A DNA stretch of 64,000 nucleotides, from IMG/VR virus record IMGVR_UViG_3300042391_001376, positions 140,905-204,904 of that record. One strand, given 5' to 3'. A model generated the notes under the pieces. It ran no database searches. It was not told the origin of the DNA and worked only from the letters and a program-made list of their open reading frames with translations. The position numbers and the translations under genes are program-made. Of the stretch, positions 8,262-57,320 are shown piece by piece. The first letter of the stretch is position 1. Each line of letters opens with the position of its first letter.

Positions 8262-9248
8262 ATGGATGAATCAAAAACTTTAGAAGTAATCATCGCTCAA
8301 TTAGAGCGTCAATTTGGTGCCGGATCCGTAATTACTCTCGGGTCTACCAATGTGCAAAAATGGCCTTGTATCCCCACCGGTGCTGCTACGCTAGATAATA
8401 TTCTCGGTATAGGCGGCTTACCTAGAGGGAGAATAGTGGAAATATATGGACCAGAGTCTTCTGGCAAATCCACCATTGCTCTTACTGTTATTACAGAAGC
8501 CCAAAAAATGGGCTTGAAGTGCGCTTATATAGATGCCGAGCATGCTTTAGACCCAATTTACATGACCGCTTTAGGCGTGGATTTAGATAAGTTAATCTTT
8601 TCTCAACCAGATTACGGCGAGCAAGCTTTAGAAATAGTTGACCGTCTTGTACGCTCAGGTGAAGTGGGAGTTGTCGTAATTGACTCTGTTGCTTCACTCA
8701 TTCCAAAAGCAGAGCTAGAAGGTGAGATGGAGTCCGCTCAGATGGGCCTACAAGCTCGTCTAATGGCCAAAGCGATGCGAAAGCTAGTTTCGGCCGCATC
8801 CGAGACAAAAACGCTCCTATTGTTTATAAATCAGTTGCGCAACAAAATTGGTGTTATGTTTGGTAATCCCGAAACCACTCCTGGTGGTATGGCTCTTAAG
8901 TATGCTGCCTCGGTACGCATTGACTTGCGTAAGAAGGAAGATCTTAAGGATAAATCTGGTGAGGCAATAGGAATCAAGGTTAAGGCTAAGATTATTAAAA
9001 ACAAAATGGCTCCTCCACTAAAAATTACAGAATTTGACATTCTTTACGGTAAGGGCGTGGATCAATTTGGCTGCTTGTTTGATCTTGCTTTGGGCCAAGG
9101 TATGTTCACTCAAAAAGGTGCTTGGGTTTATCTTGATGGTGAAAACTTTGCTCAAGGTAGAGACAACGCTGTAGAAAAATTAAAATCTAGAGAAGATCTT
9201 ATTATTAAGATTAAGTCTAACCTAGAGGTTAAATCACCCAATTTATAA
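8262..9248 (+). CDS. recA: RecA recombinase
   Basis: GGLPRGRIVEIYGPESSGKST, DAEHALDP, FINQLR, GNPETTPGG, KNKMAPP. Confidence 0.98.
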   Translation: MDESKTLEVIIAQLERQFGAGSVITLGSTNVQKWPCIPTGAATLDNILGIGGLPRGRIVEIYGPESSGKSTIALTVITEAQKMGLKCAYIDAEHALDPIYMTALGVDLDKLIFSQPDYGEQALEIVDRLVRSGEVGVVVIDSVASLIPKAELEGEMESAQMGLQARLMAKAMRKLVSAASETKTLLLFINQLRNKIGVMFGNPETTPGGMALKYAASVRIDLRKKEDLKDKSGEAIGIKVKAKIIKNKMAPPLKITEFDILYGKGVDQFGCLFDLALGQGMFTQKGAWVYLDGENFAQGRDNAVEKLKSREDLIIKIKSNLEVKSPNL

Positions 9249-15633: not shown

Positions 15634-16437
15634 ATGAAGCCATTCAATCCAGGGGACAAGGTACGTTCCAAGGCAAAGCCTCATATAACAGGCACTGTAA
15701 AGTGGGTTAGGTTTGAACCCAATGGAGTATCTGTTAATAGGCAAAATTCACGTGGAAAATGGAACTATGTCCAGAAGATACCAAAGGGAGGTTATACCGT
15801 ATCTATTAACTGGGATCCAGTCCCACAACTTGGTTACTACCCAGAGCGTCCTTTGCACGGTCTACAGGGGTCTACCGCAATTGAGTTAGTGCCGCAAGAA
15901 AATGTCAATCAAGAAACAACAAACAACGAAAGGAAAGAAGCCATGTCAAATCAACCAACAACAATTCGGGAGGTAAATCCGATGAAGCAGTGCAAACACC
16001 AAGTCTGGGATTGGAAATTAATTCCAGGACAAGTAAACACAGACTACAAGGCAGTTTATTGTGAACTGTGTGGAGAGCAACTGGCTCAACTTGCACCAAA
16101 GAACAAACCAATGACAGATAAGCAGATAAAGTTTATCCGGTCTTTGTTCTTGGAAGTTAAATCAAACATGACAATTGATGAGCAGGAGTCTTTGACAACA
16201 AAGATGAAAGCACATATCGATGGGACAAATGTACTCACCACCAAGTGGGCATCAGCAGCTATTGACAAGCTTAAGGCATACAAGCCTAAGCCTGTTAAGC
16301 CTGTTCAAGTCATGGAAGAGGATGAGCCATTTGGCAAAGTTGAATGTCATGTATGTGGCACGAAATACCAGCCAGAAGAAATGGGCGGATCAGGCACTGA
16401 AGTATTCACCAACGGATGCATCGCATGTCTGTATTAA
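15634..16437 (+). CDS. multi-module hypothetical protein (SH3-like N-terminus, Zn ribbons, TxKQ helical domain); internal in-frame start at 15982
   Basis: PGDKV, CELC, MTDKQIKFI...ASAAIDKL, CHVC; GGAGGT before 15982. Confidence 0.65.
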   Translation: MKPFNPGDKVRSKAKPHITGTVKWVRFEPNGVSVNRQNSRGKWNYVQKIPKGGYTVSINWDPVPQLGYYPERPLHGLQGSTAIELVPQENVNQETTNNERKEAMSNQPTTIREVNPMKQCKHQVWDWKLIPGQVNTDYKAVYCELCGEQLAQLAPKNKPMTDKQIKFIRSLFLEVKSNMTIDEQESLTTKMKAHIDGTNVLTTKWASAAIDKLKAYKPKPVKPVQVMEEDEPFGKVECHVCGTKYQPEEMGGSGTEVFTNGCIACLY

Positions 16438-16481
16438 ATCAATCAAACAATCAACCAACAACAAATGGGGAGGTAAAACCC

Positions 16482-19157
16482 ATGGAAACACCACAACAAA
16501 AGCTCAATCGTTTAACGACAGAGCCTCAACAGAAAGGAGCAGAAGTGATTGCATTCATGCATGACTTCTTCCATACCATCACCAACGACCCAACAGAGCG
16601 TGAGTCATTGGCCTATTCAACCGTAAAGAAGACGGGCAAACCATTCAAGATGGGGACAACAGTTCGCACTGGTGAGAATGGTGCATACAACCACCATATC
16701 TGGCTTATGCCAATCAACAACAACCCTACTTGGAAGTATGGACTCTTGGAGCACAAGCTTAACAGCCGCGGTAAGAAGTTCAAGCTTAAGATGATCACAA
16801 TCAATGAGCTGAAGCAGTGGATCAGCAAGGACAACGGAGACTTAGATGCACTCATCAAAGAATCCAACTTTGCTTGGGCTAATGCAACACATGCTTTCTT
16901 CTTGAAGATGCGTGAAGACAACAACTGGTCATTGGATGATCTTGGTGTCAGCGTAATCGACATGAAGAAGACATCAAAGCGACTTCAAGAAATCACACGG
17001 TTTACTCAGGTATATCGTTCAAGGTCAATGAAGTCAGTCACCACTAAGGCTTATACGAACGAATGGCTTGAGCAATACTACTCTAGCTATGGATTGAAGT
17101 ATGATCCAGCAGATGAGGTGATGTTCGATGGACCAGCCTTCATGCGCAAATCAGCATTCATCAAAGCTTGTTTCCCTATCAAAGATGCGGAAGTAAGAGG
17201 CAAGATGATTGGTGGTGTACACGGTGACAATCGCACTTGGTTGTTCCGTATGAAAATGGAAGGCTGCATGCTTAAGGGCTTGTTGCACATTGTTGAGGAT
17301 GATGAAATCCCAGCAGACATTGTGTACCATGAATCAATGGAAAAGAAGGAATTGTCCACAACAGATGGTAATTATACATTTGTAGCGTGGCCGATGCCAA
17401 CTCTGTACGAAGTAACGATTGACGATCAATCAATGATCAATAATCCATGGTTGTACACCACTGAACACCTCAAAACTACATGCGACAGTCTTTTGTCTGA
17501 CTTCAAGAAAGAAATCGAAGTGGGCAATATGCCAGAATGGATGACTGTTAGCATGGATGACCAAGAGGATCATGGAGTAGTCAACGAAGACAATGAACTC
17601 CAAGAGTGGCAAGCAAACTACATCAAGTGGCAAAAGGCTGGGTTCTCATTGTATGACAGCTCAAACTTTATTCACATGGCGTACGGTCAGCTTGCTAATC
17701 GCATGAGTGCATCAGTTAAGCGTGGTAACATCTGGTTGCCAATGTTTAACGCATTCATGGCTCCTGTCATTACTCATGAGGCATTGCAAATCATGGGTGG
17801 ACAAGAACTGCCAGAGTCAAAGTCAAATGTTGTATGGTATGACAAGCGCTTCGGTGCAATCATCCCAGGCAACCGCTTTGTTGAGACAGCAGATCTTCAC
17901 GACACATGGGACCAAGATGGTGACATGGCCAGGTTCATCCGCATTAAGTTGTGGAGCTCTTCGCCAGTTGTAACTCTCTATGGGTTGTCACACCAGGAAT
18001 TCAGGGATGGATTTGTTATCCCAGCTGACCTGGAAGTACCAACCACACCAGAAGAAGCAATCGACATGGTTGTCATCATTCGTTCACCAAACGGACCTGG
18101 TGGTTATTCAATCGAGCGTTACGATGCAGAGACAATGCCATTTATGCGTGTAAACGAGGACATGGTACAGGTAATTGACCTTAGCAAAGCAACATTGCCG
18201 ATGAGCACACTGCTTAAAGACACTATTGTTGACACTAAGCTCAATGAAATCCTGAACTCAACACAGTACACCAAGAGGGGATTCACACGGGATAACGCCA
18301 AGGACATGATTGATGCACAACTGCACAACCCTGGGTTTGGTTCATTCTCAAACTTCATGATGGTGCATGCAAGTGTGTTCGGTCCAAGCTACCCAACCTA
18401 CATGCCAGCTAGTGGTAATGACATTATCGATGCAAGCTCTCAGACAGCAAACATTGAGGCATTCCGCTTTATCAGTGGCAGCGTATCAACCATGTGGCAA
18501 TCATTGATCGATGATATGGTCAAACAAGATATCAAGATTGACAGCTACATGATGAGTCGTATCCCTGATCGGTTCAAGCATGAGTTGGAAGGTAATGTCT
18601 ATGATGGACCATTGGCAGAGCTCAGTGAGCACTACATCAAGGTACTCAAGGATGTACGCGAAGAGAAGAAGAACACCATCTATCTCCGCATGCGTTCTGA
18701 GTTAATTCCTCAACTGCAACAGTTAATCCCTACACTGTCAGATCAAACACAGGCTGTCTGTGAAGCATTCAACACCAAGTATATCCACATGTTGCGTGCA
18801 TTTGACGAGCGTAAGGCAGAAGCTAAGGCAGAAGAGACAAAGTGGTCAAGCCGCTACTTCAAGGCATGGAACGCTGTGTATTCTTCAACCGAGTTGGAAG
18901 CCATTGTCAAGATGATGGTCGATGAGATTGAAACGTCCAAGTCACCAACCAAGATGGCTGTTGCTATCTATCGCTGGATGACTGATCCAAAGATGAGCTA
19001 CGAGAGGGTGTATCACGAAGGTCGTGGCGAATACATCAAGGCCAATGCTCATCTGCGTTATGGTCTAGTTGACCGTGTAATGTTCCAAGCCGGCAAGCGT
19101 GGGCAGAAATCAATGATGGATCTGCTTATCCAGGGGCTCAAGGATCTGGGCCTCTAG
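16482..19157 (+). CDS. putative single-subunit two-barrel RNA polymerase, YonO/eukaryotic RdRP-like (paralog 1)
   Basis: KTSKRL, FDG, R...LKG, SMEK, DQDGD (17910-17924), IIRSP, FGSFSN; start set by GGAGGT RBS. Confidence 0.75.
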   Translation: METPQQKLNRLTTEPQQKGAEVIAFMHDFFHTITNDPTERESLAYSTVKKTGKPFKMGTTVRTGENGAYNHHIWLMPINNNPTWKYGLLEHKLNSRGKKFKLKMITINELKQWISKDNGDLDALIKESNFAWANATHAFFLKMREDNNWSLDDLGVSVIDMKKTSKRLQEITRFTQVYRSRSMKSVTTKAYTNEWLEQYYSSYGLKYDPADEVMFDGPAFMRKSAFIKACFPIKDAEVRGKMIGGVHGDNRTWLFRMKMEGCMLKGLLHIVEDDEIPADIVYHESMEKKELSTTDGNYTFVAWPMPTLYEVTIDDQSMINNPWLYTTEHLKTTCDSLLSDFKKEIEVGNMPEWMTVSMDDQEDHGVVNEDNELQEWQANYIKWQKAGFSLYDSSNFIHMAYGQLANRMSASVKRGNIWLPMFNAFMAPVITHEALQIMGGQELPESKSNVVWYDKRFGAIIPGNRFVETADLHDTWDQDGDMARFIRIKLWSSSPVVTLYGLSHQEFRDGFVIPADLEVPTTPEEAIDMVVIIRSPNGPGGYSIERYDAETMPFMRVNEDMVQVIDLSKATLPMSTLLKDTIVDTKLNEILNSTQYTKRGFTRDNAKDMIDAQLHNPGFGSFSNFMMVHASVFGPSYPTYMPASGNDIIDASSQTANIEAFRFISGSVSTMWQSLIDDMVKQDIKIDSYMMSRIPDRFKHELEGNVYDGPLAELSEHYIKVLKDVREEKKNTIYLRMRSELIPQLQQLIPTLSDQTQAVCEAFNTKYIHMLRAFDERKAEAKAEETKWSSRYFKAWNAVYSSTELEAIVKMMVDEIETSKSPTKMAVAIYRWMTDPKMSYERVYHEGRGEYIKANAHLRYGLVDRVMFQAGKRGQKSMMDLLIQGLKDLGL

Positions 19158-19293
19158 GATAAGTATTATCTTAATGTTATATTCTAAACAAGCACCGTGC
19201 TCTGCCTAGTCCCCAAGACTTGGTTCCACTTTGATTCTAAACACGGTTCAAGAGATTTTCCGCGGTCTGGCCCCCATCACGGGTCTGGCCGTT

Positions 19294-19304
19294 GAATAAG
19301 TCGG
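19294..19304 (+). promoter_or_regulatory. GAATAAGTCGG motif copy 1 (candidate phage RNAP promoter)
   Basis: repeated six times in 19.3-28.9 kb, all on the + strand. Confidence 0.55.
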
Positions 19305-19386
19305 GGTCTTTCGGGACTTCGCCTACTGGTAACATCGGGTTGCTGGTAGTTTATGTGACTACGGTCACAGAAAGGGGTTGGGTCTA

Positions 19387-19914
19387 ATGACTCTTCTCAT
19401 CACTAAGGTTGGTGCACCTACAACGCACACACATAACTTGAAGGACGGCTCAGGCTCGTTCAGCAAGACCGAAATTCCTGTAACCCTACAGGCTAAGTTC
19501 GGTGAGGAAGCAGGCTTTCAGATTGGTGTGAACTACACTGTCTGGATGGACGCTGCTCGTGCAAGCAAAGTCGTCGCGATTGCTCAGGCATTCATTGATG
19601 GCACAGCCACTGACAGTAACGGTGAACTGTATCACCCAAGTTGCCGTCTTGCTGTACTCAACGACAGCGAGTGCTTTACTGCGGGCGAACTGCGGACGAA
19701 AGACTTGACCAACAAGTTTGGTGGCACATACACTGTGACCAACCAGACCATTTGGTTGAAGGACGACACGGCTTTGACTTATGACATTGCCGAGTTGGCT
19801 GTTTCCCCTCAGCGTGGCAATATCGATGACCTCGATATCCTCGTTGACTTCCGTGGTGCTGGTTTGGTTGCGCCAGTTGTTACATCCACTGCTACTGCTG
19901 AAGTGCCTTTCTGA
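19387..19914 (+). CDS. hypothetical protein ending in ATAEVPF (SSB-tail-like)
   Basis: ATG after GAAAGGGG; codon usage typical of high expression; followed by a terminator. Confidence 0.75.
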   Translation: MTLLITKVGAPTTHTHNLKDGSGSFSKTEIPVTLQAKFGEEAGFQIGVNYTVWMDAARASKVVAIAQAFIDGTATDSNGELYHPSCRLAVLNDSECFTAGELRTKDLTNKFGGTYTVTNQTIWLKDDTALTYDIAELAVSPQRGNIDDLDILVDFRGAGLVAPVVTSTATAEVPF

Positions 19915-19935
19915 CACTTTAGTTTTAGCCCGTTT

Positions 19936-19990
19936 TGTCAGTCAGGTCGGTATGCCCCCCCGCATATCGGCTTGACTGACATTTTTTTTT
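19936..19990 (+). terminator. intrinsic terminator
   Basis: 20-bp stem TGTCAGTCAGGTCGGTATGC/GCATATCGGCTTGACTGACA plus T9. Confidence 0.9.
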
Positions 19991-20036
19991 GCAACTAGTT
20001 CCCTAATCTTTTTTTTGTTCCTAGTGTCCTAATCCT

Positions 20037-20050
20037 TAGGAATAAGTCGG
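20037..20050 (+). promoter_or_regulatory. TAGGAATAAGTCGG motif copy 2
   Basis: intergenic, just after a terminator and before an RBS. Confidence 0.6.
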
Positions 20051-20250
20051 AGAAAAGGAGAATAGCATGAGTGAACCTTACATTTGCGGAACAGCAGCAC
20101 CTGATCCTTGCGAATTTGAAAGCGTAGAGCATCATGACGCTACTTGTCAAGAATGTCTATCTTGGTTTCCAACATGGACAGCGGCTCAACAAGCAGCTAA
20201 AGCAGCAAGAGATCTGTGTAAATAATCATAGGACACATATAAAAGCCTAT

Positions 20251-20402
20251 GTACTGGTAGCCTGTAAACCAATGGATGTCGAATCAGGCTGAGTAGTCAA
20301 CACTTATATATACATACGGTCGTTCTACCGATGTAAAGTTGATAATGAACAGTCGAGTTACAGCGACTTTTAAACATTTAGGGTAACCTAGGCCACTGGT
20401 AC
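20251..20402 (+). ncRNA. candidate multibranch structured RNA, possibly related to copies A/B
   Basis: closing stem GTACTGGT/ACTGGTAC; AGCCTG/CAGGCT; stem-TAAA-ATGAAC-stem-TAAAC. Confidence 0.4.
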
Positions 20403-20490
20403 AAGGGCGACATTATTGTACTGTCTGACATATGCAGGAATAGCGTTGTATCAATATGTTATATTATTCATCTCAATTGAAAGGATTGTT

Positions 20491-20769
20491 ATGGGAATTC
20501 AAGATGACTCATTTGATGTTAATCTTATTGCGACCAAAGAAGGTCTAATAAAGATTAGCCAGATGACTTTGCTAGAAACGGTCAAGGAAATGAACCGCCG
20601 TACAGACTCATTGCTTGAGATCTGTGAATCACACCAAATACTTATTGAGCAGTTGTCCGATAAAGTTATTTCTTTACAGGACGCACTTGATAATCTCAAG
20701 CCTTGCCAATGCTGTGGAAACAACCCATGCCTCGAATCACTCGATGCAACTAAACATGGAGACTACTAA
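20491..20769 (+). CDS. hypothetical coiled-coil protein
   Basis: AAGGA RBS before the ATG at 20491. Confidence 0.6.
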   Translation: MGIQDDSFDVNLIATKEGLIKISQMTLLETVKEMNRRTDSLLEICESHQILIEQLSDKVISLQDALDNLKPCQCCGNNPCLESLDATKHGDY

Positions 20770-21011
20770 TGGATCTCATCTTACCTTTAGGCATTCTAAT
20801 CCTCATATCAGCAGTCTTCGTTCGCGGGATTGTGCGATATGTTGCCGGCAACCCATGGAAGTTACATCGTTGCATGAACCACCAGTTCTACTTTGAAGAA
20901 ATAGATTGTCGTGGAATATATTGTGGCGTATGTCACAAGGACATAGACATTGAGTATTATTCTAAAGGAATAAGTCGGGAGGGAATAACCCATGAAAATA
21001 CAAATGATTGA
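20769..21011 (+). CDS. membrane-anchored hypothetical protein
   Basis: hydrophobic N-terminus, CxxH/CxxC. Confidence 0.6.
   Translation: MDLILPLGILILISAVFVRGIVRYVAGNPWKLHRCMNHQFYFEEIDCRGIYCGVCHKDIDIEYYSKGISREGITHENTND
20966..20978 (+). promoter_or_regulatory. AGGAATAAGTCGG motif copy 3
   Basis: exact core repeat. Confidence 0.55.
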
Positions 21012-21179
21012 TGACATACCACGCAAAGGTTTGTGTGCCATATGTCACAAGACCAAACTCACAGTAACAGTATCAATCAAATCCAAAGGAAGTCCTATAA
21101 TCACCACTGAAGATTGGTGCTTAGAAGATTTCCACACACTACAAGATAAAACACTCACACTACACTGAAAGGTAGAACC

Positions 21180-21473
21180 ATGATATCAAAATATGAAACA
21201 AAAGATGAAAACTGGGAATCCTATGGTTTTCTTAATGTACTAACCGAATATCACACACGCCCTCAAGGTATGATCAGTTCAATGCGAGCTGAAAAATACA
21301 ACGATGGTAATGTTCATATTGAATTCAACATTCAAAGCCCAAGTGGTACACCAGATTCATCTGACTTCCTAACCTACACTATGCTAGAAATCAATTCATT
21401 TGAACGCGCTAAAGCTATTGTAGATATGTATGCAACCATGTTAGACTCTTACATTCTAAAGATGTCAGCATGA
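21180..21473 (+). CDS. hypothetical protein
   Basis: 97 aa, AAGG RBS. Confidence 0.65.
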   Translation: MISKYETKDENWESYGFLNVLTEYHTRPQGMISSMRAEKYNDGNVHIEFNIQSPSGTPDSSDFLTYTMLEINSFERAKAIVDMYATMLDSYILKMSA

Positions 21474-21668
21474 AAACATTCGGACTAATCTCAATATCAT
21501 TTGCTGCGGGTAGCATCTCAATGATGATGTGGATTCGCAAAATATTCAATAAAACAATGAAAGGAACCTTGTGAAAAAACTTGCAATCATCACTACAACA
21601 ATAGCATTCGTTATTGCCGGCTTAGCATTATACATCAAAAAGATGACATTGTTCAAAGGAGAATAAAC

Positions 21669-21902
21669 ATGAAGCATAAAATACTACTAACATTTGCAAT
21701 TCTTACTTTAGCTATTCCAGTTTCTACTGCAAACGCTAAAGGTGGAGGAAGTCATTGTGTAAAAATATTTAATCAATCAACTAAAATTTGGGGCTGGAAT
21801 TGTGAAGGTAAACCTAAATTCTTTATATGTGGTAAAGCCTACAGATGCATGTCATTACCACCAGGAACTAAAATTTACGCTACAGGCCAAATTTACCCTT
21901 AA
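21669..21902 (+). CDS. small secreted Cys-containing protein
   Basis: signal peptide ending ANA, AAGGAG RBS. Confidence 0.65.
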   Translation: MKHKILLTFAILTLAIPVSTANAKGGGSHCVKIFNQSTKIWGWNCEGKPKFFICGKAYRCMSLPPGTKIYATGQIYP

Positions 21903-21915
21903 AAGGAGAATAAGC

Positions 21916-22182
21916 ATGAACTATAAGAAACTATTCTGGGGCTACATGGCATTTAGTGCTATCACTGGCTTCTTTATTGGCATTGTGCGCGGCATTGAGC
22001 AAGAAAAGATCAAGCGTCGCTTACGCAATAACCCATTGTCTGCCAGTAAAGCATTTCAAGAAGTGTACGGACACTACAACAATGATGACCTAGACTTTCC
22101 TGAATGGGTCAACACTGATGAAGACGCTAGATTCAATAGCATTGTAGGCCGTCTAAACCATCCAACGAACCGACAGAAGTAG
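21916..22182 (+). CDS. membrane-anchored hypothetical protein
   Basis: AAGGAG RBS, N-terminal TM helix. Confidence 0.65.
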   Translation: MNYKKLFWGYMAFSAITGFFIGIVRGIEQEKIKRRLRNNPLSASKAFQEVYGHYNNDDLDFPEWVNTDEDARFNSIVGRLNHPTNRQK

Positions 22183-22193
22183 GAATAAGTCGG
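22180..22193 (+). promoter_or_regulatory. TAGGAATAAGTCGG motif copy 4
   Basis: exact repeat at a gene end. Confidence 0.6.
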
Positions 22194-22287
22194 GATATTT
22201 TCGGAGGGGGGTGACCGTTGTTTGATTGGCTATTCGATATTATCCAAGATATATTAGATTCAATATTCAACTAAGGAGAAAAACATT

Positions 22288-22467
22288 ATGTTAGGTAAAT
22301 TTCTAGGCAAAGTTACTGGCAAATCAGTGGAAGTAGTTACTGCTACGCCAGATTTTCTAAAGACGAACACTAAAGCGACTATGGAAGCACTCAAGAGTGC
22401 AAAAGATGGATTCGTAACTGATTTCAAGGCTGAATACAACAAGCCTGAAGTAACTAACGAGGACTAA
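22288..22467 (+). CDS. small hypothetical protein (59 aa)
   Basis: AAGGAG RBS, manually translated MLGKFLGKVTG... Confidence 0.6.
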   Translation: MLGKFLGKVTGKSVEVVTATPDFLKTNTKATMEALKSAKDGFVTDFKAEYNKPEVTNED

Positions 22468-22546
22468 TACAAAGATTTGGGCTAGTCCCAAAATAAGCAA
22501 TAAACACATATCATATCCACATAATAAACACATAAGGAATAAACAC

Positions 22547-23590
22547 ATGTCATTACTCGAAAAATTCGGTTACAAGAAAGACGAGTTCGCAATCGCTTTG
22601 GAAAACCCAGAGTTGTTTGCATCAAACTCAACTACCACTAAAATTACTGTTGGTACACCAGCCAAGATTGCTGGTTCTATCAATGGCGTTGCTGTTCCAA
22701 CCACCATTCTAGTAAAGAATGCTAACTGGAGCCGTCTCACCGTGCGTGACCATGTTATCCGTCGTCAGGACGCAGAGCCACGCATCAGCCAAGTATTCGG
22801 TGGTGTATTCAATAACTTCCAAGCAGACATCACGCTTGAAGTTGATGGTACTGAAATGTCATTGTATGAACTCATGAAGCAGTTCTGCATCGAATCGTTC
22901 GGTACATCCCTTACAGATGACCAAGTAAACAAGATGTTGGAGAGCAACCTTTCGCTCAACGGCATTCGTAACGGTGGCCCTCTGATGTTCCAGCAAATGG
23001 GTGCAAATCCTGCTGGTATCGCACACGCAGTAGAAGCGTTCCGTACAGCTGGAGCAATTGACGATATGAAGTCTGTTGCATCAAGCAAATCATTCAATAC
23101 AGCTTATAAGATTCCTGGCGATGGTGCTGGTCTTGAAGTTGTATCGTTTGAACTTGGTACATCTGACCGTTCACTCTCAAAGACAGGACAAGGCTTCATT
23201 GACATCGTCAGTGCAGTGACTGAGAACTTTGAGCGTGTAAAGAATCACAAGTCTGTTGCTAAAGTATTGCAGGACAAGTTGAACGCAAGCATCGGTTCAA
23301 TGAGCCAAGAAGCAATCAAGAAAGCACAGGCAGAAATCAAGATTGAACTTGACATGGCTAAAGACTATGCTAACTGCTGGTCTGGTGCTGCTCGTCAAAC
23401 CAAGATTGACAATGGTCGCAAGATCGTTGAGAACAAGTACAATGCAGTAAACGCCCCATGTGGTCGTTGGTCTGCAGTAGTTGCTGGTCAAACCATCGAC
23501 TTTGATGTATGGTCAAACTCGACAAAAGCACCAGTACAAACCGCAGAACAGCAGATCAGCGATATCGCAACCGCTGAGGTACCGTTCTAA
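22547..23590 (+). CDS. hypothetical protein ending in ATAEVPF (SSB-tail-like)
   Basis: 347 aa, AAGGA RBS, followed by a hairpin. Confidence 0.8.
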   Translation: MSLLEKFGYKKDEFAIALENPELFASNSTTTKITVGTPAKIAGSINGVAVPTTILVKNANWSRLTVRDHVIRRQDAEPRISQVFGGVFNNFQADITLEVDGTEMSLYELMKQFCIESFGTSLTDDQVNKMLESNLSLNGIRNGGPLMFQQMGANPAGIAHAVEAFRTAGAIDDMKSVASSKSFNTAYKIPGDGAGLEVVSFELGTSDRSLSKTGQGFIDIVSAVTENFERVKNHKSVAKVLQDKLNASIGSMSQEAIKKAQAEIKIELDMAKDYANCWSGAARQTKIDNGRKIVENKYNAVNAPCGRWSAVVAGQTIDFDVWSNSTKAPVQTAEQQISDIATAEVPF

Positions 23591-23602
23591 GGTTATCTAA
23601 AT

Positions 23603-23652
23603 TTGGTGGGGTTGGCCTGACTGATCGCGGGTCAACCCTACTAATAAACTTT
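23603..23652 (+). terminator. probable terminator or stabilising hairpin
   Basis: TTGGTGGGGTTGGCCTG/CGGGTCAACCCTACTAA stem. Confidence 0.6.
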
Positions 23653-23760
23653 TAGTGGGTAGTAAGTGTGCACATTCCCGATGAATGCTGCGAACCAACC
23701 ATTTGCTACCCACTATTTAAGTATAATAAAAAAAATTTTATTAACTCAAAAAGGATTAAC

Positions 23761-24024
23761 ATGAGCACCCCACTTGAAATGCTAAATATCCAGCGTTGGA
23801 TGAAGGACGCCGCATGCAAAGGAAACACTGAAGGTGACTGGTTCCCAGAACAACCAGGCAGGACCCCAGCTATCAAAATAGCAATAGACATCTGTAAGCA
23901 ATGCGCGGTAAAACAAGAATGCTATGATTATGCTATAAACCGCCCAGAACTACAAGGCATCTGGGGTGGAGTAACAGCACGCAAACGTGGGAACCTACGA
24001 TCCAAAGGAAAGAAAAGTGAATGA
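23761..24024 (+). CDS. whiB: WhiB-family Fe-S transcription factor
   Basis: W...AACKG...WFP...CxxCxVxxxC...GIWGG. Confidence 0.92.
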   Translation: MSTPLEMLNIQRWMKDAACKGNTEGDWFPEQPGRTPAIKIAIDICKQCAVKQECYDYAINRPELQGIWGGVTARKRGNLRSKGKKSE

Positions 24025-24394
24025 ATACCCAACAAATTATCCTAAGCATGGCTTTCACATGTGTCATGGGTGCGGGTCTATGGCTCCGCATCATACTCAA
24101 GAAAACTTTCCAGATAATGGATGGGCATTTAATCTCAATCACTTCGGATACTATGCCGGCTTCACAGATCCAATCGGAGAACCAGAACAACTAGTCAGAC
24201 TATGTCACGACTGCGTAATAAAGTTCCTAGACGCCTTCCCACTACTCAGTGTACTAGTAGGCAAAGGATGCCACAGCCAATCAGGCCCCAATGAAAAACC
24301 ATGCTGTCAATATGCATGGAAAGCAGAATGGATAGGCAACAGTGCCATAACCTATTTAGCTTCAGAAGATGGCCAACAATGGATCATCCAATAA
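24017..24394 (+). CDS. Cys/His-rich hypothetical protein
   Basis: GTG start after AAGGA; CHGC, GYYAGFTD, LCHDC. Confidence 0.65.
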   Translation: MNEYPTNYPKHGFHMCHGCGSMAPHHTQENFPDNGWAFNLNHFGYYAGFTDPIGEPEQLVRLCHDCVIKFLDAFPLLSVLVGKGCHSQSGPNEKPCCQYAWKAEWIGNSAITYLASEDGQQWIIQ

Positions 24395-32651: not shown

Positions 32652-34331
32652 ATGACTTTAACTTTAAGACCTTATCAGATAGAAGCACTTGAATCTATTC
32701 AAAATCATCTAGACAAAGGTATAGTTAAACAACTTGTCGTTCTCCCAACTGGAGCCGGCAAGACTGTAATTTTTAGTAATATTCCTCAGACCATAAAAGA
32801 CAGTTTACCTATGCTAGTTTTAGCTCACCGTGGTGAGTTATTAACCCAAGCTAAAGATAAAATTCTTTGGTCTAATCCTCAACTGGATGTTCAGATTGAA
32901 AAAGCTGAAGATACAGCTGATCTATGCGATGTTGTAGTAGCATCTGTACCCACTTTGGGTAGAGCTGATTCTCAAAGAATATTAAAATATCCTAAAGACT
33001 ATTTTAAAACTATTATCATTGATGAAGCACACCACGCTGCTGCTGAAACATACCGTAGAATACTTGATTACTTTACTCCTAAATTTCTATTGGGTGTTAC
33101 AGCAACTCCTCAGAGATCTGACTCTGTTAGATTAACTGATGTATTTGATGAAATCACCTACTATAAAACTATTCAAGACTTGATCCAAGAAGGATACTTA
33201 TGTAGACTTGTTGGCTATAGAATAAAGACCGACACTGACATTTCAGAAGTGGAGACTTCGCATGGCGACTACATGGCATCCCAGTTGGAAGATACTATCA
33301 ATACTCCTACTCGTAACGCTATTGTTGTTAAATCTTATTTTGAGTTTGCGCAGAACAAAAAAGCAGTCGTATTCGCATCCGGTGTTAAGCACGCCAGAGA
33401 CTTGGCCGCATCCTTTGCGCAAAAGCAGATACCTGTACGAGTAATACTTGGAGACACTCCAGATGATGAACGAAAACAAGCACTTGCTGACTTTGCATCT
33501 GGTACTATCAAGGTAATAGTTAACGTTGGCGTACTAACAGAAGGGTTCGATGAGCCTTCTATCGGTGCGATTATACTTGCCCGACCAACACGTTCTTCCC
33601 TACTGTATACACAAATAGTAGGTCGTGGTACTAGACTTTACGAAGGTAAAGACAACTGCATTATCATAGATATTGCTGACACCACTAAAGGCAAGAAGCC
33701 TTTGGGATTACCAACTTTGTTGGGAATGCCACCTGAATTCGACCTGAAGGGTCAAGACCTAGTTGATGTAGCAGAAAAATATAAAGAGCTTGAAGACTAC
33801 TGTCCTGGTGAAGCTGTTCGTGTTTTATCTTTAGATGATATAGAACTAGCTTACAAACGTATCGATCTCTTTATGCCACCACCACCTAACGAAATAGTTC
33901 AAACCTATTCTCGTTTTGTTTGGGCCGAAGTAGCCGAAAATGATTTTCATTTAGGTATCAATCAGGATGAATCTATTAGAATTCATGTTGATGCTTTAGG
34001 CAGATGGACTACCACTCTAAAACAAAAAATAAAAGACGGTTCTAAAGATACTGTGCTTGGTCATCCAGAAGATATGCGTGAAGCATTTGTTCGTACCGAT
34101 AGGTGGATTACAAGTAACAGATCTTATAACCTAAATCTTTTAGATAATACTGCTGCTTGGAGATCTGATTCTCCAACAGATAAACAACACAAGATGCTTA
34201 AGCGCATGGGTATCCCAATCACTGCTGATATGACTAAAGGAACTGCTAGTCAGATTATATCTAAATACTATGAAGCTAATCCCAAGCCTAAATGGCTTGA
34301 AAACAAAATAGCTTCTAAAAAATGGAATTAA
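32652..34331 (+). CDS. superfamily II DEAH helicase (RadD/Irc3-like)
   Basis: LRPYQ, PTGAGKT, DEAHH, TATP, LTEGFDEP, QIVGRGTR. Confidence 0.95.
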   Translation: MTLTLRPYQIEALESIQNHLDKGIVKQLVVLPTGAGKTVIFSNIPQTIKDSLPMLVLAHRGELLTQAKDKILWSNPQLDVQIEKAEDTADLCDVVVASVPTLGRADSQRILKYPKDYFKTIIIDEAHHAAAETYRRILDYFTPKFLLGVTATPQRSDSVRLTDVFDEITYYKTIQDLIQEGYLCRLVGYRIKTDTDISEVETSHGDYMASQLEDTINTPTRNAIVVKSYFEFAQNKKAVVFASGVKHARDLAASFAQKQIPVRVILGDTPDDERKQALADFASGTIKVIVNVGVLTEGFDEPSIGAIILARPTRSSLLYTQIVGRGTRLYEGKDNCIIIDIADTTKGKKPLGLPTLLGMPPEFDLKGQDLVDVAEKYKELEDYCPGEAVRVLSLDDIELAYKRIDLFMPPPPNEIVQTYSRFVWAEVAENDFHLGINQDESIRIHVDALGRWTTTLKQKIKDGSKDTVLGHPEDMREAFVRTDRWITSNRSYNLNLLDNTAAWRSDSPTDKQHKMLKRMGIPITADMTKGTASQIISKYYEANPKPKWLENKIASKKWN

Positions 34332-42312: not shown

Positions 42313-42645
42313 ATGTTAATAGAACGAAAGCCCTGGATGCAGGAATCTTCTTGTAATGAAGAAGATACAATTGTATTTTTCCCTAACAGATATACTGAAG
42401 CTACAGTGGCTAAGCCATTTTCTCTATGCGACACATGTTTAGTTAAAGCCGACTGTCTTTACGAGGCAATGATTACTGATTCTGTTGGCATATGGGGCGG
42501 AACAACCGAATACCAACGACTCATGCTTTTATCTAAATTATTTAATGATAACTCAAAAAATGTTAACATGAAAGCAATTATTAAGATAATAGAAAACAAC
42601 TACTACTCAATACCAATTTCATCTAGATATGAACAAAAATATTAA
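42313..42645 (+). CDS. whiB: WhiB-family transcription factor
   Basis: W...SSC...FFP...CDTCLVKADC...GIWGG. Confidence 0.9.
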   Translation: MLIERKPWMQESSCNEEDTIVFFPNRYTEATVAKPFSLCDTCLVKADCLYEAMITDSVGIWGGTTEYQRLMLLSKLFNDNSKNVNMKAIIKIIENNYYSIPISSRYEQKY

Positions 42646-42686
42646 TTCTAAAAAAAGCCTTATAGATCAAAAGAGTAGGTAGCATA

Positions 42687-44662: not shown

Positions 44663-44680
44663 CCTAAGGAATATAATATC

Positions 44681-46324
44681 ATGGATAAAGTTTCTTACAG
44701 TTTTGTAAAAGAAGACAGCAATCTTATCTTTCGGTCTAAAGTAAATTCATTTAATCTTGACCACGTTACAGATAAAGATATAACTTCATTTTTTACATCT
44801 TTTTCTAATTATGCTTACTTTGATACTGGCTTGCTTCCTGTTGATGGAACTGGCTTATTAGGTATCAGACGCGCAGGAGACCACACTCAAGTTATATACC
44901 AGTATAAGCCTGGTATGTATTATGTTAATTGGGGTGCATATGAAAGAGACTCTGATTACACTAAGTATTATTTAGCTCAACCTTACAGGATTGTTGTTAT
45001 AGACTTTCTTAGCGACAACCTTTTAGGTGCTAGAACATTTTATACTGTAGAGCCGGCTATCCATTCTGCTGTTCAGCTTTACCATGTAAACTTACCAAAC
45101 ATTAATTGCAGAGGTTACCGAGGCAACGGTGTTGGTTGGATTTGCCTATACCATAATGAAGATTGGTCTACTCTTCCATTTAATGAAAGATTGAACAGAG
45201 CTCTTGAGCGTTGTTCTGGCGTTGAAGTATATAACGATGCCAACATGAGTGAAACAGACGGCCCACGCTTTTACCAAGAAAGAGAAATGCCTTTGTATAC
45301 TTGGTCCCCAAGTAAGTGGGAAAAAAAATCTACTGAAGAAGGTTGGGAATGGACTTTAGATTCATCTAATTGGATACCAATTCATGTTGAAAGCAGAGAC
45401 AGCCAAGGGCAACACAAAGAAGGCGGCATTCCCCTTACTTTAGTAGACGCAATTATTGGCAACTATAGTTCATACTATGGAGATACTTATTTGCCAAAAC
45501 CAGTAAACGCTTTGACTCGTTCAGATCTTGAAATTAATCCAATACAAGTTACTGATTGGTTTGTTAAATCTTATAATTCATCTAAAACTACATTTTCTGG
45601 GTTAGACCCATATTCTGCTAGTTCACAAATCAGAGAACAAAATTCTGTAGCTGTACCTAATTTGTTTGATGAAGACGAAGAAGAAATTGATGAAGACAGC
45701 GAAGACTACATAGCCTGTACAATGACAGGTGAAGCTACACCAATCGAAGATTGTTCAAAAGATCATTCTTATTACAATGTTAATACAGGCAAATGCATGA
45801 AGATTTGTTCTGAATGCATAAGCAGTCACGAGATGGTTTACGCAGAAAACACCATGCAGTTTTATGTCCCTGATCATATGGGCGACAGCCTTTATTATGA
45901 TACACACCACGATCAGTATTACGACACTAATGCCATAAAGACTCCTTGGGGCAACTGCTCTAATTGCGGAGGTATTCACATTTCTCCATTCCCAGATAAA
46001 CAATTATTCTTAATTTGGGAAAATCAACAAGAAGAACATTCTTCACTTTGTGCTTTCTGTATAGGTGGAGAAAATGTTGCTGATTGTATTAATTGTGGCG
46101 TCAATGTACCAAGTCACACTTCTCAACATTTTGATCCAACAACAGTAAAGTATGATCCTTCCACACAATACTACCATTGTGCGGTGTGTGTTGAAATCCT
46201 TCAATCAGCCAATTCTGAAGACGTAGCAGAATCAAACCAAGCTGAAGCTAAAAATTTATTACAACTATTGTCAGAACTTACAGATGGTACTTTAATTATA
46301 TCTTCTGATGAAGAACCGTTCTAA
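44681..46324 (+). CDS. prokaryotic E2 family D-like conjugating enzyme fused to CxxC-rich C-terminal region; ends SDEEPF
   Basis: DTGLLP, YLAQPYRIV, LYHVNLPNI...GWICL; adjacent to JAB/E1/Ubl. Confidence 0.72.
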   Translation: MDKVSYSFVKEDSNLIFRSKVNSFNLDHVTDKDITSFFTSFSNYAYFDTGLLPVDGTGLLGIRRAGDHTQVIYQYKPGMYYVNWGAYERDSDYTKYYLAQPYRIVVIDFLSDNLLGARTFYTVEPAIHSAVQLYHVNLPNINCRGYRGNGVGWICLYHNEDWSTLPFNERLNRALERCSGVEVYNDANMSETDGPRFYQEREMPLYTWSPSKWEKKSTEEGWEWTLDSSNWIPIHVESRDSQGQHKEGGIPLTLVDAIIGNYSSYYGDTYLPKPVNALTRSDLEINPIQVTDWFVKSYNSSKTTFSGLDPYSASSQIREQNSVAVPNLFDEDEEEIDEDSEDYIACTMTGEATPIEDCSKDHSYYNVNTGKCMKICSECISSHEMVYAENTMQFYVPDHMGDSLYYDTHHDQYYDTNAIKTPWGNCSNCGGIHISPFPDKQLFLIWENQQEEHSSLCAFCIGGENVADCINCGVNVPSHTSQHFDPTTVKYDPSTQYYHCAVCVEILQSANSEDVAESNQAEAKNLLQLLSELTDGTLIISSDEEPF

Positions 46325-46363
46325 TCAAAAACAACGAATACAATATAACATTAGGGAGAACAT

Positions 46364-48851: not shown

Positions 48852-48870
48852 ACAATAACAAGGAGCAATC

Positions 48871-49122: not shown

Positions 49123-49140
49123 TACATTCAGTCTCAGGTT

Positions 49141-49190
49141 TGTGGGAAGGCTCTATACATTCCGCGTAAGAGTCTTCCCACATTTTTTTT
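49141..49190 (+). terminator. intrinsic terminator after the Ubl gene
   Basis: TGTGGGAAGGCTCT/AGAGTCTTCCCACA plus T8. Confidence 0.85.
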
Positions 49191-56888: not shown

Positions 56889-57320
56889 ATGATAGACCCA
56901 CGCAACTTAATTAACCTTACCGGAGGAGTTGTTACCGATGTTGAATTGGTTAACGACAAAATTGCAAAGTTTCGTTTAGCGGTAGATTACGCTGGATCAG
57001 AAAAAGGTTCAGATAATACATCAGGATATTTTGATGTGGTGTATTACCTCAAAGATGCCAATGGTTTTATTGGCAAGAACGCAACCTTTATCCATGGTCA
57101 AGTAAAGGCTGATAAAATTAAGAAGGGCGCAAAGCTTCAAATTGTTGGACGCTTAGTGCAAGAAAGATGGAAGCAAGACGATCAAAATAAGAATCGTGTT
57201 GTTGTAGTTGCAGAGCATATTTCTTATGCAACAACTGCTGGAGCCCAAGGAGCTAAAACAGCTTCCGCTGGAACATCGTCTGACACAGAAACGCAAAGCT
57301 CTGTACCAGACAGCTTCTAA
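56889..57320 (+). CDS. ssb: single-stranded DNA-binding protein
   Basis: NLINLTG, FRLAVD, KKG...VGRL...W, tail VPDSF. Confidence 0.9.
   Translation: MIDPRNLINLTGGVVTDVELVNDKIAKFRLAVDYAGSEKGSDNTSGYFDVVYYLKDANGFIGKNATFIHGQVKADKIKKGAKLQIVGRLVQERWKQDDQNKNRVVVVAEHISYATTAGAQGAKTASAGTSSDTETQSSVPDSF

What the first reader, a model, noticed from the sequence alone, without database searches (positions are those of the whole stretch)
19387..23590. Two apparently unrelated proteins end in the identical ATAEVPF; the first E2 ends in DEEPF (SSB-tail mimicry)
The tails are encoded by different synonymous codons (gct act gct gaa gtg cct ttc vs gca acc gct gag gta ccg ttc), so the peptide rather than the DNA is conserved. 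Both genes lie downstream of a motif copy and end in a strong hairpin. Established: bacterial SSBs recruit partners through an acidic ...PF C-terminus (DDIPF in E. coli, DDEPPF in mycobacteria). The phage's own SSB ends in PDSF. Inference: a shared docking tag for the phage RNAP or for host SSB-binding proteins; the E2 tail could aim Ubl conjugation at SSB-interacting replication, repair or defence proteins.
Basis: partly seen in the sequence, partly recalled or inferred. Interest (0 to 1): 0.72.

Follow-up and report, generated by a model that had tools for sequence, protein, structure and literature searches.

The report
Shared SSB-like PF tail tag
Three unrelated proteins of a large freshwater phage all end in the same "…PF" peptide that bacterial DNA-coating protein SSB uses to recruit partners. 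The tag is kept, and changes in step, across related phages, so it is very likely a shared docking address, though what it docks onto is unknown.

Summary
Gene A (19387-19914, 175 aa) and gene B (22547-23590, 347 aa) align only in their last residues, ATAEVPF, and those are written with different synonymous codons. A third protein, C (44681-46324, E2-like), ends in DEEPF. These are the only three genes of the 205-kb genome that end in PF.

- PF is invariant in the A family and nearly so in the B family.
- PF ends 83 of the 120 best C homologues, although their C-terminal halves differ.
- In 10 of 11 lineages A and B carry the same residue before PF (V, E, D, A or K).

A looks like an OB-fold SSB, though the evidence is weak. 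B belongs to an unannotated phage family whose distant members carry textbook SSB-type tails: a low-complexity linker plus an acidic tip such as DDDDEEEPF or GDEEPPF.

My reading is that this is an SSB-type C-terminal docking tag. It sits on two probable ssDNA-handling proteins and on an E2-like enzyme, so it is not simple mimicry by bystander proteins. The phage's canonical SSB uses a different invariant tail, SVPDSF.

The receptor is unknown. One docking job, against the phage's RadD-like helicase, gave no answer. I rate this a new variant of a known kind.

The parts
19387..19914 (+). Gene A: 175-aa protein, predicted OB-like beta-barrel core (residues 1-157) plus a disordered tail (159-175) ending ATAEVPF
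   Evidence: ORF and sequence. AlphaFold model, pLDDT 65.6, tail pLDDT below 50. Fold hits are almost all SSB or OB ssDNA binders. Homologues.
19891..19911 (+). Tail codons of A (ATAEVPF)
   Evidence: PF is invariant in 20 of 20 aligned homologues.
19936..19990 (+). Intrinsic terminator after A: 20-bp stem followed by a T9 run
   Evidence: -33.5 kcal/mol, z -7.35. The hairpin is kept in related genomes.
19294..19304 (+). GAATAAGTCGG motif copy, 93 nt upstream of A's ATG. It lies inside a conserved leader of about 180 nt.
   Evidence: A metatranscriptome contig starts at 19331.
22183..22193 (+). GAATAAGTCGG motif copy upstream of the small ORF 22288-22467 and of gene B
   Evidence: Metatranscriptome contigs start at 22216, 22216 and 22248.
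22547..23590 (+). Gene B: 347-aa protein of an unannotated phage family. The core fold has no recognisable relative. It ends ATAEVPF.
   Evidence: ORF. Model, pLDDT 80.6. No fold match. Family. It is the best-covered stretch in four lake metatranscriptomes.
23567..23587 (+). Tail codons of B (ATAEVPF)
23603..23644 (+). 17-bp hairpin after B, with no T run
   Evidence: -28 kcal/mol, z -7.08. Kept with compensatory changes in L005, G002 and L076. RNA coverage stops here.
44681..46324 (+). Gene C: 547-aa protein with a conserved N-terminal E2-like domain, a variable Cys-rich C-terminal half, and the tail SSDEEPF
   Evidence: Neighbours are JAB (46364-48103), ThiF/E1 (48072-48851) and an AAA ATPase (49223-50827).
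56889..57320 (+). Canonical phage SSB (PF00436), which carries a different tail, SVPDSF, that is invariant in relatives
32652..34331 (+). RadD-like SF2 helicase, a candidate receptor for the tail. This is inference only.
   Evidence: E. coli RadD binds the SSB C-terminus (PMC10238739). The docking job gave no answer.
16416..19157 (+). 913-aa protein that always lies directly upstream of A. It has an invariant HDTWDQDGD motif and may be a two-barrel RNA polymerase.
   Evidence: No family or PDB match.

Best explanation
The C-terminal ...xPF is a short linear docking motif of the same type as the bacterial SSB C-terminal tip. It consists of a flexible linker, some acidic residues, and a final Pro-Phe whose side chain and free carboxylate fit a hydrophobic pocket with a basic rim.

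In this clade of roughly 200-kb freshwater phages, probably actinophages, three unrelated proteins carry it:
- A, a small OB-fold, SSB-like protein.
- B, an abundant 347-aa protein of an uncharacterised family. The family's ancestral tail is a full SSB-type linker plus an acidic tip, so B is most likely a second ssDNA-coating or replisome-hub protein with a new core.
- C, an E2-like enzyme encoded beside a JAB peptidase, an E1 and an AAA ATPase.

A and B present the same address and so compete for, or hand over to, the same partner pocket. That is why their tails change together. C is brought to the same kind of pocket by a more acidic version. The partner is a genome-maintenance protein, either phage-encoded (for example the RadD-like helicase or RecA) or one of the host's SSB-interacting proteins.

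Shown here: the motif, its conservation, its covariation, and the tail architecture. Inferred: ssDNA binding by A and B, and the identity of the receptor.
For: 1. Only the tail is shared between A and B. Chance expectation is 6.7e-5.

- A family: PF in 20 of 20 proteins. Among 26 loci the only variants are one PY and two PFG.
- B close family: F is invariant and P is present in 36 of 38.
- C family: 83 of the best 120 end in PF and 102 end in F. This holds although lengths run from 342 to 691 aa and the C-terminal halves differ.

3. Census of six whole genomes: apart from small spurious ORFs, only A (or a protein in A's place), B and C end in PF.

4. Covariation:
- The residue before PF is the same in A and B in 10 of 11 lineages where A is a recognisable homologue.
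- It is the same in 11 of 13 lineages when the two position-equivalents are included: V/V, E/E x3, D/D x2, A/A x2, K/K x3.
- Random pairing would give 2.7 matches (permutation p < 5e-6; p = 0.002 after collapsing to one pair per state).
- Whole 8-mers shift together: ATAxxPF in one clade, [VI][DE]T[TS]xxPF in the other.
- Synonymous codons usually differ, so this is not recent gene conversion.

5. SSB-type architecture. A profile search of 1.84 billion representatives found 118 B relatives.
- Of the 98-99 full-length ones (two scripts differ by one), 41 end in PF and 59 end in F.
- The last ten residues hold 3.4 acidic and 0.26 basic residues on average.
- Residues -45 to -10 are 78% S/T/A/P/G/Q/N/V/D/E.
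- Example tails: DDDDDDDAPF, DDDDEEEPF, IDDDEEPF, GDEEPPF.
- For comparison, the mycobacterial SSB tip is FGGGDDEPPF and needs its final Phe (PMC7847540). The E. coli tip is DDDIPF (PMC5872125).

6. A's fold. Foldseek on PDB and on Swiss-Prot AFDB lists almost only bacterial SSBs. VIA-align lists OB ssDNA binders (RPA, TEBP, CST, PriB, SSB). The Atlas lists PF00436 clusters. The tail, residues 159-175, is disordered.

7. Genomic context is replication and recombination, not virion structure: RecA at 8262-9248, a RadD-like helicase, and WhiB.

8. B is the best-covered stretch in four lake metatranscriptomes, as expected of an abundant early or middle protein.
Against: - No receptor was identified. 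The one docking job (RadD-like helicase with B's tail) returned no answer.
- The window's own tails are only weakly acidic, with one Glu. Tails in the sister clade (VDTTKAPF, TTQKPF) have a basic or neutral residue before PF. Classical SSB tips rely on acidic residues.
- The fold evidence for A is weak: Foldseek E about 0.01, TM 0.2-0.4, Z about 5, and a model pLDDT of 65.6.
- B has no detectable OB fold or any other known DNA-binding fold.
- The phage already has a canonical SSB with its own conserved tail, so a need for two more SSB-like proteins is not obvious.
- Covariation counts are few and phylogenetically structured.
- RNA coverage comes from assembled contigs of RNA libraries, which may contain DNA.
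Confidence: 0.55

Rival explanations
1. Host take-over by true mimicry. The tails copy the host SSB tip so that abundant phage proteins, and the E2-like enzyme, occupy the SSB-binding pockets of host replication, repair or defence proteins. This would starve host SSB of partners or mark those partners for Ubl conjugation. It differs from the best explanation in that the receptor is host-encoded and the effect is inhibitory.
For: - High-GC members of the B family end in ...DEEPPF or ...DDEEPF. These are close to the actinobacterial SSB tip DDEPPF (PMC7847540, PMC3575820).
- The phage's own canonical SSB avoids this tail and keeps SVPDSF.
- C's tail is hyper-acidic, like an SSB tip.
- WhiB genes point to actinobacterial hosts (PMC10914622).
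Against: - The host and its SSB tail are unknown.
- The residue before PF varies V/E/D/A/K between closely related phages, and it varies in step in A and B. A co-evolving phage receptor explains that more easily than a conserved host pocket does.
- Nothing here tests inhibition.
Confidence: 0.15
2. The tag docks on a phage RNA polymerase. A and B would be transcription cofactors, in the way the N4 SSBs serve N4 RNA polymerases, and the tail would bind the polymerase.
For: - Gene A always lies directly downstream of an 830-1145-aa protein with an invariant HDTWDQDGD motif. That matches the DxDGD metal site of two-barrel RNA polymerases.
- A and B sit behind copies of a phage-specific upstream motif.
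- From my own knowledge, N4 SSB activates transcription through its C-terminus.
Against: - The polymerase assignment rests on one motif. There is no Pfam, PHROG or PDB match.
- Synteny alone is weak evidence of binding.
- The C family with the same tail is far more widespread than this gene pair.
Confidence: 0.1
3. The tag is read by an AAA+ unfoldase, as a degron or an activator. The PF terminus would be recognised by the phage's ClpB/ClpC-type ATPase (6269-7684, minus strand), by its Cdc48-like AAA protein (49223-50827), or by host ClpX. This would time the removal of A, B and C, or activate the ATPase.
For: - The mycobacterial SSB tail activates ClpX in a manner that depends on the terminal Phe (PMC7847540).
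- The phage encodes a ClpB/ClpC D2-type ATPase.
- An AAA ATPase sits in the same cluster as C.
Against: - The linker-plus-acidic-tip architecture and A's OB-like core point to SSB-type hubs rather than to substrates.
- No known Clp degron resembles xPF, to my knowledge.
- Nothing was tested.
Confidence: 0.1
4. The shared tail has no function of its own. It is either chance, or a piece of DNA copied from one gene to the other.
For: A single recombination event could have placed one tail on the other gene long ago. The shared [VI][DE]T[TS]...PF pattern of the A and B tails is compatible with one origin.
Against: - Chance expectation is 6.7e-5.
- PF is kept over sequence divergence down to 37-42% identity in both families, and in a third family.
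- Synonymous sites differ.
- The residue before PF changes in step at least five times.
Confidence: 0.02

Closest known systems
Bacterial SSB C-terminal tip (SSB-Ct; E. coli MDFDDDIPF, mycobacterial GGDDEPPF), a hub for about 17 SSB-interacting proteins
   Same: - The motif sits at the extreme C-terminus behind a disordered, low-complexity linker.
- It ends in Pro-Phe, and acidic residues precede it in most family members.
- The carrier is, or looks like, an ssDNA-binding protein (A).
- The Phe is the best-conserved residue.
Sources: PMC10018359, PMC5872125, PMC7847540, PMC10238739.
   Different: - It is carried by proteins that fail the SSB family model (A) or have an unrelated core (B, C).
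- In this phage the acidic run is almost gone (ATAEVPF).
- The residue before PF is variable and co-varies between two proteins of one genome.
- The phage's bona fide SSB uses another tail (SVPDSF).
Phage T7 gp2.5 (SSB) and gp4 (helicase-primase): two unrelated proteins with acidic C-terminal tails ending in Phe that contact the T7 DNA polymerase
   Same: - Two unrelated phage replication proteins share a C-terminal acidic tail ending in Phe, and the tail addresses a common partner.
- The terminal Phe is essential.
Sources: PMC12339929 and the references it cites. That paper aligns the gp2.5 tail onto the gp4-tail peptide DTDF bound to gp5. That both tails use one site is partly from my own knowledge.
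   Different: - The T7 tails end in DF, not PF.
- Covariation between the two T7 tails is not documented, to my knowledge.
- Here a third carrier is an E2-like enzyme.
- The receptor here is unknown.
EEVD-COOH tails of Hsp70 and Hsp90, read by TPR co-chaperones (from my own knowledge)
   Same: Unrelated abundant proteins end in the same short peptide, which serves as a common docking address.
   Different: The motif, the reader domain and the biology are all different. This is an analogy of logic only.
Prokaryotic E2-like enzymes (Pfam Prok-E2_D) in E1/E2/JAB gene clusters
   Same: - C has an invariant H-x-N...C...G-W-I-C-L core.
- It sits beside ThiF/E1 and JAB genes.
- Its nearest language-model cluster contains Prok-E2_D members.
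   Different: - There is no hmmscan hit to any E2 family, no PADLOC hit, and no PDB profile hit.
- C carries an SSB-like acidic PF tail. I have not seen that described for E2-like proteins.

Membership tests
SSB-Ct type C-terminal docking motif | Located at the extreme C-terminus with a free carboxylate on a terminal Phe | tested here: met
   A, B and C all end in F followed by a stop codon. F is kept in 20 of 20 A, 38 of 38 close B, and 102 of 120 C homologues.
SSB-Ct type C-terminal docking motif | Penultimate Pro | tested here: met
   P is kept in 20 of 20 A and 36 of 38 B close homologues. PF ends 83 of 120 C homologues and 41 of the 98-99 full-length distant B representatives.
SSB-Ct type C-terminal docking motif | Run of acidic residues before the tip | tested here: inconclusive
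   The run is strong in the B superfamily (3.4 acidic residues in the last 10) and in the C family (3.2). It is weak in this window's A and B (one Glu) and absent in some sister-clade tails (TTQKPF, TTVAPF).
SSB-Ct type C-terminal docking motif | Preceded by an intrinsically disordered, low-complexity linker | tested here: met
   A residues 159-175 have pLDDT below 50. B-superfamily residues -45 to -10 are 78% small or polar residues and vary in length.
SSB-Ct type C-terminal docking motif | Binds a hydrophobic pocket with a basic rim on partner proteins | not testable with these tools
   One docking job (RadD-like helicase 1-350 with B 324-347) returned 'no answer'. That counts neither for nor against binding.
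Bacterial-type SSB (Pfam PF00436), for protein A | Match to the family profile | tested here: not met
   There is no Pfam or PHROG hit at E <= 0.01. A PDB profile search found nothing relevant. The genome's only PF00436 match is 56889-57320.
Bacterial-type SSB (Pfam PF00436), for protein A | OB fold (five-stranded barrel with a helix between strands 3 and 4) | tested here: inconclusive
   The model has the strand-strand-strand-helix-strand order. SSB and OB proteins dominate four searches, but with weak scores: E about 0.01, TM 0.2-0.4, Z about 5.
Bacterial-type SSB (Pfam PF00436), for protein A | Binds ssDNA | not testable with these tools
   This needs a gel-shift or fluorescence assay.
E2 / Prok-E2_D ubiquitin-conjugating-like enzymes, for protein C | Match to an E2 family profile | tested here: not met
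   Pfam at E <= 1 gives nothing for residues 1-345. PADLOC gives nothing. A PDB profile search gives nothing. The only lead is an Atlas feature neighbour in which 13% of members carry Prok-E2_D.
E2 / Prok-E2_D ubiquitin-conjugating-like enzymes, for protein C | Conserved catalytic Cys downstream of an H-x-N motif | tested here: inconclusive
   H135, N137, C143 and C155 are invariant in 34 homologues. The spacing differs from classical UBC domains, and no structure was predicted.
E2 / Prok-E2_D ubiquitin-conjugating-like enzymes, for protein C | Encoded with E1 (ThiF) and JAB genes | tested here: met
   JAB at 46364-48103 (weak, E 5e-5) and ThiF at 48072-48851 (E 6e-13). A PADLOC E1-E2 model hits the ThiF protein.

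The most novel reading that the evidence does not exclude
B is the founder of a new fold class of phage ssDNA-binding or replisome-hub proteins that independently carries the SSB linker-and-tip. A phage E2-like Ubl-conjugating enzyme is physically recruited by the same SSB-type tail to SSB-interaction pockets or to ssDNA-protein hubs. Ubl conjugation would then be aimed at replication, repair or defence proteins. Each phage lineage would tune a private variant of the address (V, E, D, A or K before PF) that its A and B proteins share.
Probability: 0.2. Interest if true: 0.85.

Novelty: new variant of a known kind. Interest (0 to 1): 0.62.

Why it matters
SSB tails are the best-understood example of one short peptide organising a whole genome-maintenance network. 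Finding the same type of tail on three unrelated proteins would show that phages reuse and diversify this address code. The three carriers are a divergent OB protein, a widespread but unannotated phage family, and an E2-like enzyme.

The finding gives three practical leads:
- A functional handle on two ORFan families. B alone has 118 clusters at 50% identity and appears to be well expressed in lakes.
- A simple search rule for hub proteins in uncultured phages: a linker followed by an acidic ...PF at the C-terminus.
- A concrete, testable link between phage Ubl-conjugation clusters and DNA metabolism.

The in-step change of the residue before PF in A and B is a natural experiment on docking specificity.

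Tried and rejected
- Cultured-phage relatives. Megablast of the region and tblastn of A, B and two distant B relatives against 50,697 phage records found nothing.
- Fold of B. No relative was found in PDB by Foldseek, VIA wide or VIA second look, nor in BFVD, AFDB clusters or the Atlas. The only hits were one uncharacterised homologue and a generic helical hairpin at residues 205-300. Weak 'Bet' hits had TM about 0.1 and were ignored.
- Families for B. Pfam and PHROG scans of 38 close and 10 distant B members gave only noise. One source's label, 'stress-induced morphogen', probably stems from a sub-threshold BolA hit (E 0.12).
- Language-model search. No usable hit for B and only unnamed clusters for A.
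- Context of distant B members. Contigs were too short, or full of ORFans; SRAP, RNase H, Macro, WhiB and M50 genes lie nearby, which is not decisive. A broad B alignment was too divergent for a locus scan.
- Host identification through the phage RecA. The nearest matches are MAG contigs of unrelated phyla at 69-73% identity, probably mis-binned phage DNA, and otherwise about 50%. This gave no host and therefore no host SSB tail.
- Complex prediction of the RadD-like helicase (1-350) with B's last 24 residues. The verdict was 'no answer' (score 0.01). It is not evidence either way.
- Rfam on 19100-24100 found nothing.
- PDB search of the 913-aa protein found nothing.
- A literature search for EEPF-type tails returned only unrelated acronyms.
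- Clamp-binding motif (QLxLF type). Rejected by inspection, because the tails have no Gln or Leu pattern.
- Capsid-targeting or structural role. Judged unlikely because the neighbourhood is replication and regulation, not virion genes.

Full report
**Setting**

The window is the last 64 kb of a single 204,904-bp viral contig with 37% G+C, estimated 97% complete. No cultured phage resembles the region. The neighbourhood holds:
- a bacterial-type RecA (8262-9248);
- 2OG-Fe oxygenases;
- a RadD-like SF2 helicase (32652-34331);
- a subtilase;
- a ClpB/ClpC-type ATPase;
- two WhiB genes (23668-24024 and 42313-42645);
- a JAB / ThiF / AAA cluster.

WhiB is the marker used to call freshwater actinophages (PMC10914622). 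The relatives all come from lake and river metagenomes. The host is therefore probably a freshwater actinobacterium, but that is an inference.

**The observation**

Gene A (19387-19914, 175 aa) and gene B (22547-23590, 347 aa) both end in ATAEVPF, and five of the seven codons differ at synonymous sites. BLASTP aligns nothing but the tail. Neither protein has a Pfam or PHROG family.

I tested chance on a greedy set of 226 genes:
- 6.7e-5 gene pairs are expected to share their last seven residues. One pair does, and the next-longest shared suffix is three residues.
- 0.40 genes are expected to end in PF. Three do: A, B and the 547-aa protein C (44681-46324...SSDEEPF).

- The phage's canonical SSB (PF00436, 56889-57320) ends in ...SSVPDSF.
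- Strong hairpins follow both genes: -33.5 kcal/mol with a T9 run after A, and -28 kcal/mol without a T run after B.
- An upstream motif, GAATAAGTCGG, has four exact same-strand copies between 19.3 and 22.2 kb, against 0.78 expected. One copy lies 93 nt before A. Another lies 364 nt before B, ahead of a small ORF.

They are.
- *A family.* All 19 database homologues (42-94% identity) end in PF, preceded by EV, DE, VE, VD, GD, ED or EE. Among 26 loci, one ends in PY and two end in PFG.
- *B family.* Of 38 aligned proteins (37-86% identity to the window's copy), F is invariant and P is present in 36.
- *C family.* There are 464 homologues. Of the best 120, 83 end in PF and 102 end in F. This holds although their lengths range from 342 to 691 aa and the C-terminal halves are not alignable. 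Many tails are hyper-acidic, for example EDEDHNEDDEGPF.

I also fetched five related IMG/VR genomes in full and listed every ORF of 50 aa or more that ends in PF. Apart from a few short spurious ORFs, the list consists only of A (or a protein in A's position), B and C.

**Covariation**

Synteny is fixed: a large protein, then A, then a few small genes, then B, then WhiB. That let me pair the tails within genomes.
- In lineages where A is a recognisable homologue, the residue before PF is the same in A and B in 10 of 11: V/V; E/E three times; D/D twice; A/A; K/K three times. The one mismatch is Q/K.
- Two genomes (G003, G005) carry a protein of about 200 aa in A's place that has no detectable sequence similarity to A. 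Adding them gives 11 of 13.
- Random pairing would give 2.7 matches. The permutation p is below 5e-6, or 0.002 after collapsing to one pair per state.
- These lineages are related, so the number of independent events is smaller than the count. Even so, five different residues are involved.
- The similarity extends further back. One clade has (A/S)TAxxPF in both proteins and the other has [VI][DE]T[TS]xxPF in both. The [VIL][DE]T[TS] element occurs in the last 32 residues of 19 of 98 B-superfamily representatives, against 0.0077 per 32 residues elsewhere in the same proteins.
- Identical residues are usually written with different codons, for example GTG/GTA, GAG/GAA, GAT/GAC, GCT/GCC, AAG/AAA and CCT/CCG. 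So the peptide is being selected, not a recently copied stretch of DNA.

**What the carriers are**

*Protein A.* The AlphaFold model (pLDDT 65.6) is a beta-barrel with a helix after the early strands, and residues 159-175 are disordered. Four searches converge on SSB or OB-fold ssDNA binders:
- Foldseek on PDB: nearly all of the top 50 hits are bacterial SSBs.
- Foldseek on Swiss-Prot AFDB: the top 30 are all SSBs.
- VIA-align against 48,161 chains: RPA, TEBP, CST, Teb1, PriB and SSB.
- The Atlas: PF00436 and DUF3127 clusters.

All scores are weak (E about 0.01, TM 0.2-0.4, Z about 5). I rate 'OB-fold ssDNA binder' at roughly 0.7.

*Protein B.* The model is better (pLDDT 80.6) but has no structural relative beyond a helical hairpin. 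What is informative is its wider family. A profile search of 1.84 billion representatives found 118 clusters. Their C-termini look exactly like SSB tails:
- a variable, low-complexity linker (78% small or polar residues);
- an acidic tip (3.4 acidic against 0.26 basic residues in the last ten);
- ending most often in EPF or DPF, for example DDDDDDDAPF, DDDDEEEPF, IDDDEEPF and GDEEPPF.

For comparison, the mycobacterial SSB tip is FGGGDDEPPF. Its terminal Phe is required to activate partners (PMC7847540). The E. coli tip is DDDIPF (PMC5872125), and it recruits at least 17 proteins (PMC10018359). So the weakly acidic ATAEVPF of this phage is a derived form of a canonical acidic ...EEPF tail.

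B is also the best-covered stretch in four lake metatranscriptomes. Coverage stops at its hairpin. The caveats are that these are assembled contigs and that DNA carry-over is possible.

*Protein C.* It has a very conserved N-terminal domain (62% mean column identity) with invariant H135, N137, C143 and C155. It lies beside JAB, ThiF/E1 and AAA genes. Its nearest language-model cluster contains Prok-E2_D members. However, no profile search supports an E2 fold. 'E2-like' is therefore plausible but not shown.

**Mechanism**

The best-supported reading is that xPF is an SSB-Ct-type docking tag. In this reading A and B are ssDNA-handling hub proteins that present the same address to a common pocket, and so their tails drift together. 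C is delivered to the same class of pocket.

The closest precedent for two unrelated phage proteins sharing such a tail is T7 gp2.5 and gp4. Their acidic Phe-terminated tails contact the T7 DNA polymerase (PMC12339929 and references in it).

The phage's canonical SSB keeps a different tail, SVPDSF, which is invariant in five genomes at 63-94% identity. This suggests two separate address codes in one phage.

The receptor is not identified. A natural candidate is the phage's RadD homologue (E 1.4e-35 to E. coli RadD over residues 1-343). E. coli RadD binds the SSB tip in a pocket framed by R21, R49 and R145 (PMC10238739). The phage protein has D21/K22 and K49 at the first two positions. The single docking job returned no answer and counts neither way.

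The rivals, ranked in the report sections, are:
- inhibitory mimicry aimed at host SSB partners;
- docking on the putative phage RNA polymerase encoded just upstream of A, which has an invariant HDTWDQDGD motif;
- recognition by an AAA+ unfoldase.

**Verdict**

The SSB-tail idea is supported in type. I reframe it, though: the carriers are probably SSB-like hub proteins themselves, together with an E2-like enzyme that shares the address.

This is a new variant of a known kind of system. Its interest lies in three things: the covarying private address, the unannotated B family, and the E2-like carrier.

Noticed in passing
window 19294, 20040, 20968, 22183 (+); 28892 with one mismatch: GAATAAGTCGG occurs four times exactly on one strand within 3 kb, against 0.78 expected. 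Each copy lies ahead of a gene. Metatranscriptome contigs start about 25-35 nt downstream of several copies, so it is a candidate phage promoter or transcript-start marker. More distant relatives have AAAATAGGGG plus a hairpin in the same places, upstream of both A and B.
   Followed up: partly
window 19150-19386: There is a long leader of about 180 nt ahead of gene A. It has blocks conserved across relatives (ATTCTAAA, TTCTGCGG..GGCCCCCATCACGGGTCTGGCCGT, GAATAAGTCGGGG) and a small stem-loop at 19323-19349. It might be an autoregulatory element, like the T4 gene 32 leader. Rfam has no match.
   Followed up: partly
window 16416-19157: This 913-aa ORFan lies directly upstream of A in every relative. 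It has an invariant HDTWDQDGD motif, which resembles the DxDGD metal site of two-barrel RNA polymerases (YonO or QDE-1 type). It has no Pfam, PHROG or PDB sequence match.
   Followed up: partly
window 56889-57320: The canonical SSB (PF00436) has its own low-complexity linker and a tail, SVPDSF. That tail is identical in five genomes although the proteins are only 63-94% identical. It looks like a second, separate C-terminal address code.
   Followed up: partly
window 42313-51500: A cluster of WhiB, an M50-like peptidase fragment, the PF-tailed E2-like protein, a 579-aa protein with a weak JAB match, a ThiF/E1 protein, and a Cdc48-type AAA ATPase. This looks like a phage-borne Ubl-conjugation-like module.
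   Followed up: partly
window 23668-24024 and 42313-42645: Two WhiB-type genes. The first lies directly after B in all relatives. They point to an actinobacterial host despite the 37% G+C.
   Followed up: partly
G003:151647-152252 and G005:119777-120385 (loci L049/L050, L058/L059): In two related genomes the slot between the large protein and B holds a protein of about 200 aa with no detectable sequence similarity to A. It nevertheless ends in ...SSDAPF or ...DGDAPF. It is either an unrecognisably diverged A, or a replacement that acquired the same tail.
   Followed up: partly
L013:7108-7653, L120:2696-3349, L081:1374-1931: Variants of A's tail: two lineages end in ...KPFG, with one extra Gly after the Phe, and one ends in ...EPY. 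An extra residue would bury the Phe carboxylate, which is odd for an SSB-type tip.
   Followed up: no
L128, L131, L133/L134 (distant B homologues, 25-31% identity): The most distant B relatives found in metagenome contigs do not end in PF. Their ends are ...LNDF, ...GFNEE and ...NNPFEL, the last with an internal PF.
   Followed up: no
window 8262-9248; loci L141, L142: The phage RecA is a full bacterial-type RecA. Its closest matches (69-73% identity) lie on contigs binned into an Acidibacter MAG and a Cyclobacteriaceae MAG. These are probably phage contigs that were mis-binned.
   Followed up: no
window 22476-22492: A small palindrome, TTTGGG-CTAGT-CCCAAA, lies 55 nt before B's ATG and is conserved in the closest relatives. 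Its folding energy is weak (-5.6 kcal/mol), so it could be a protein-binding site rather than an RNA structure.
   Followed up: partly
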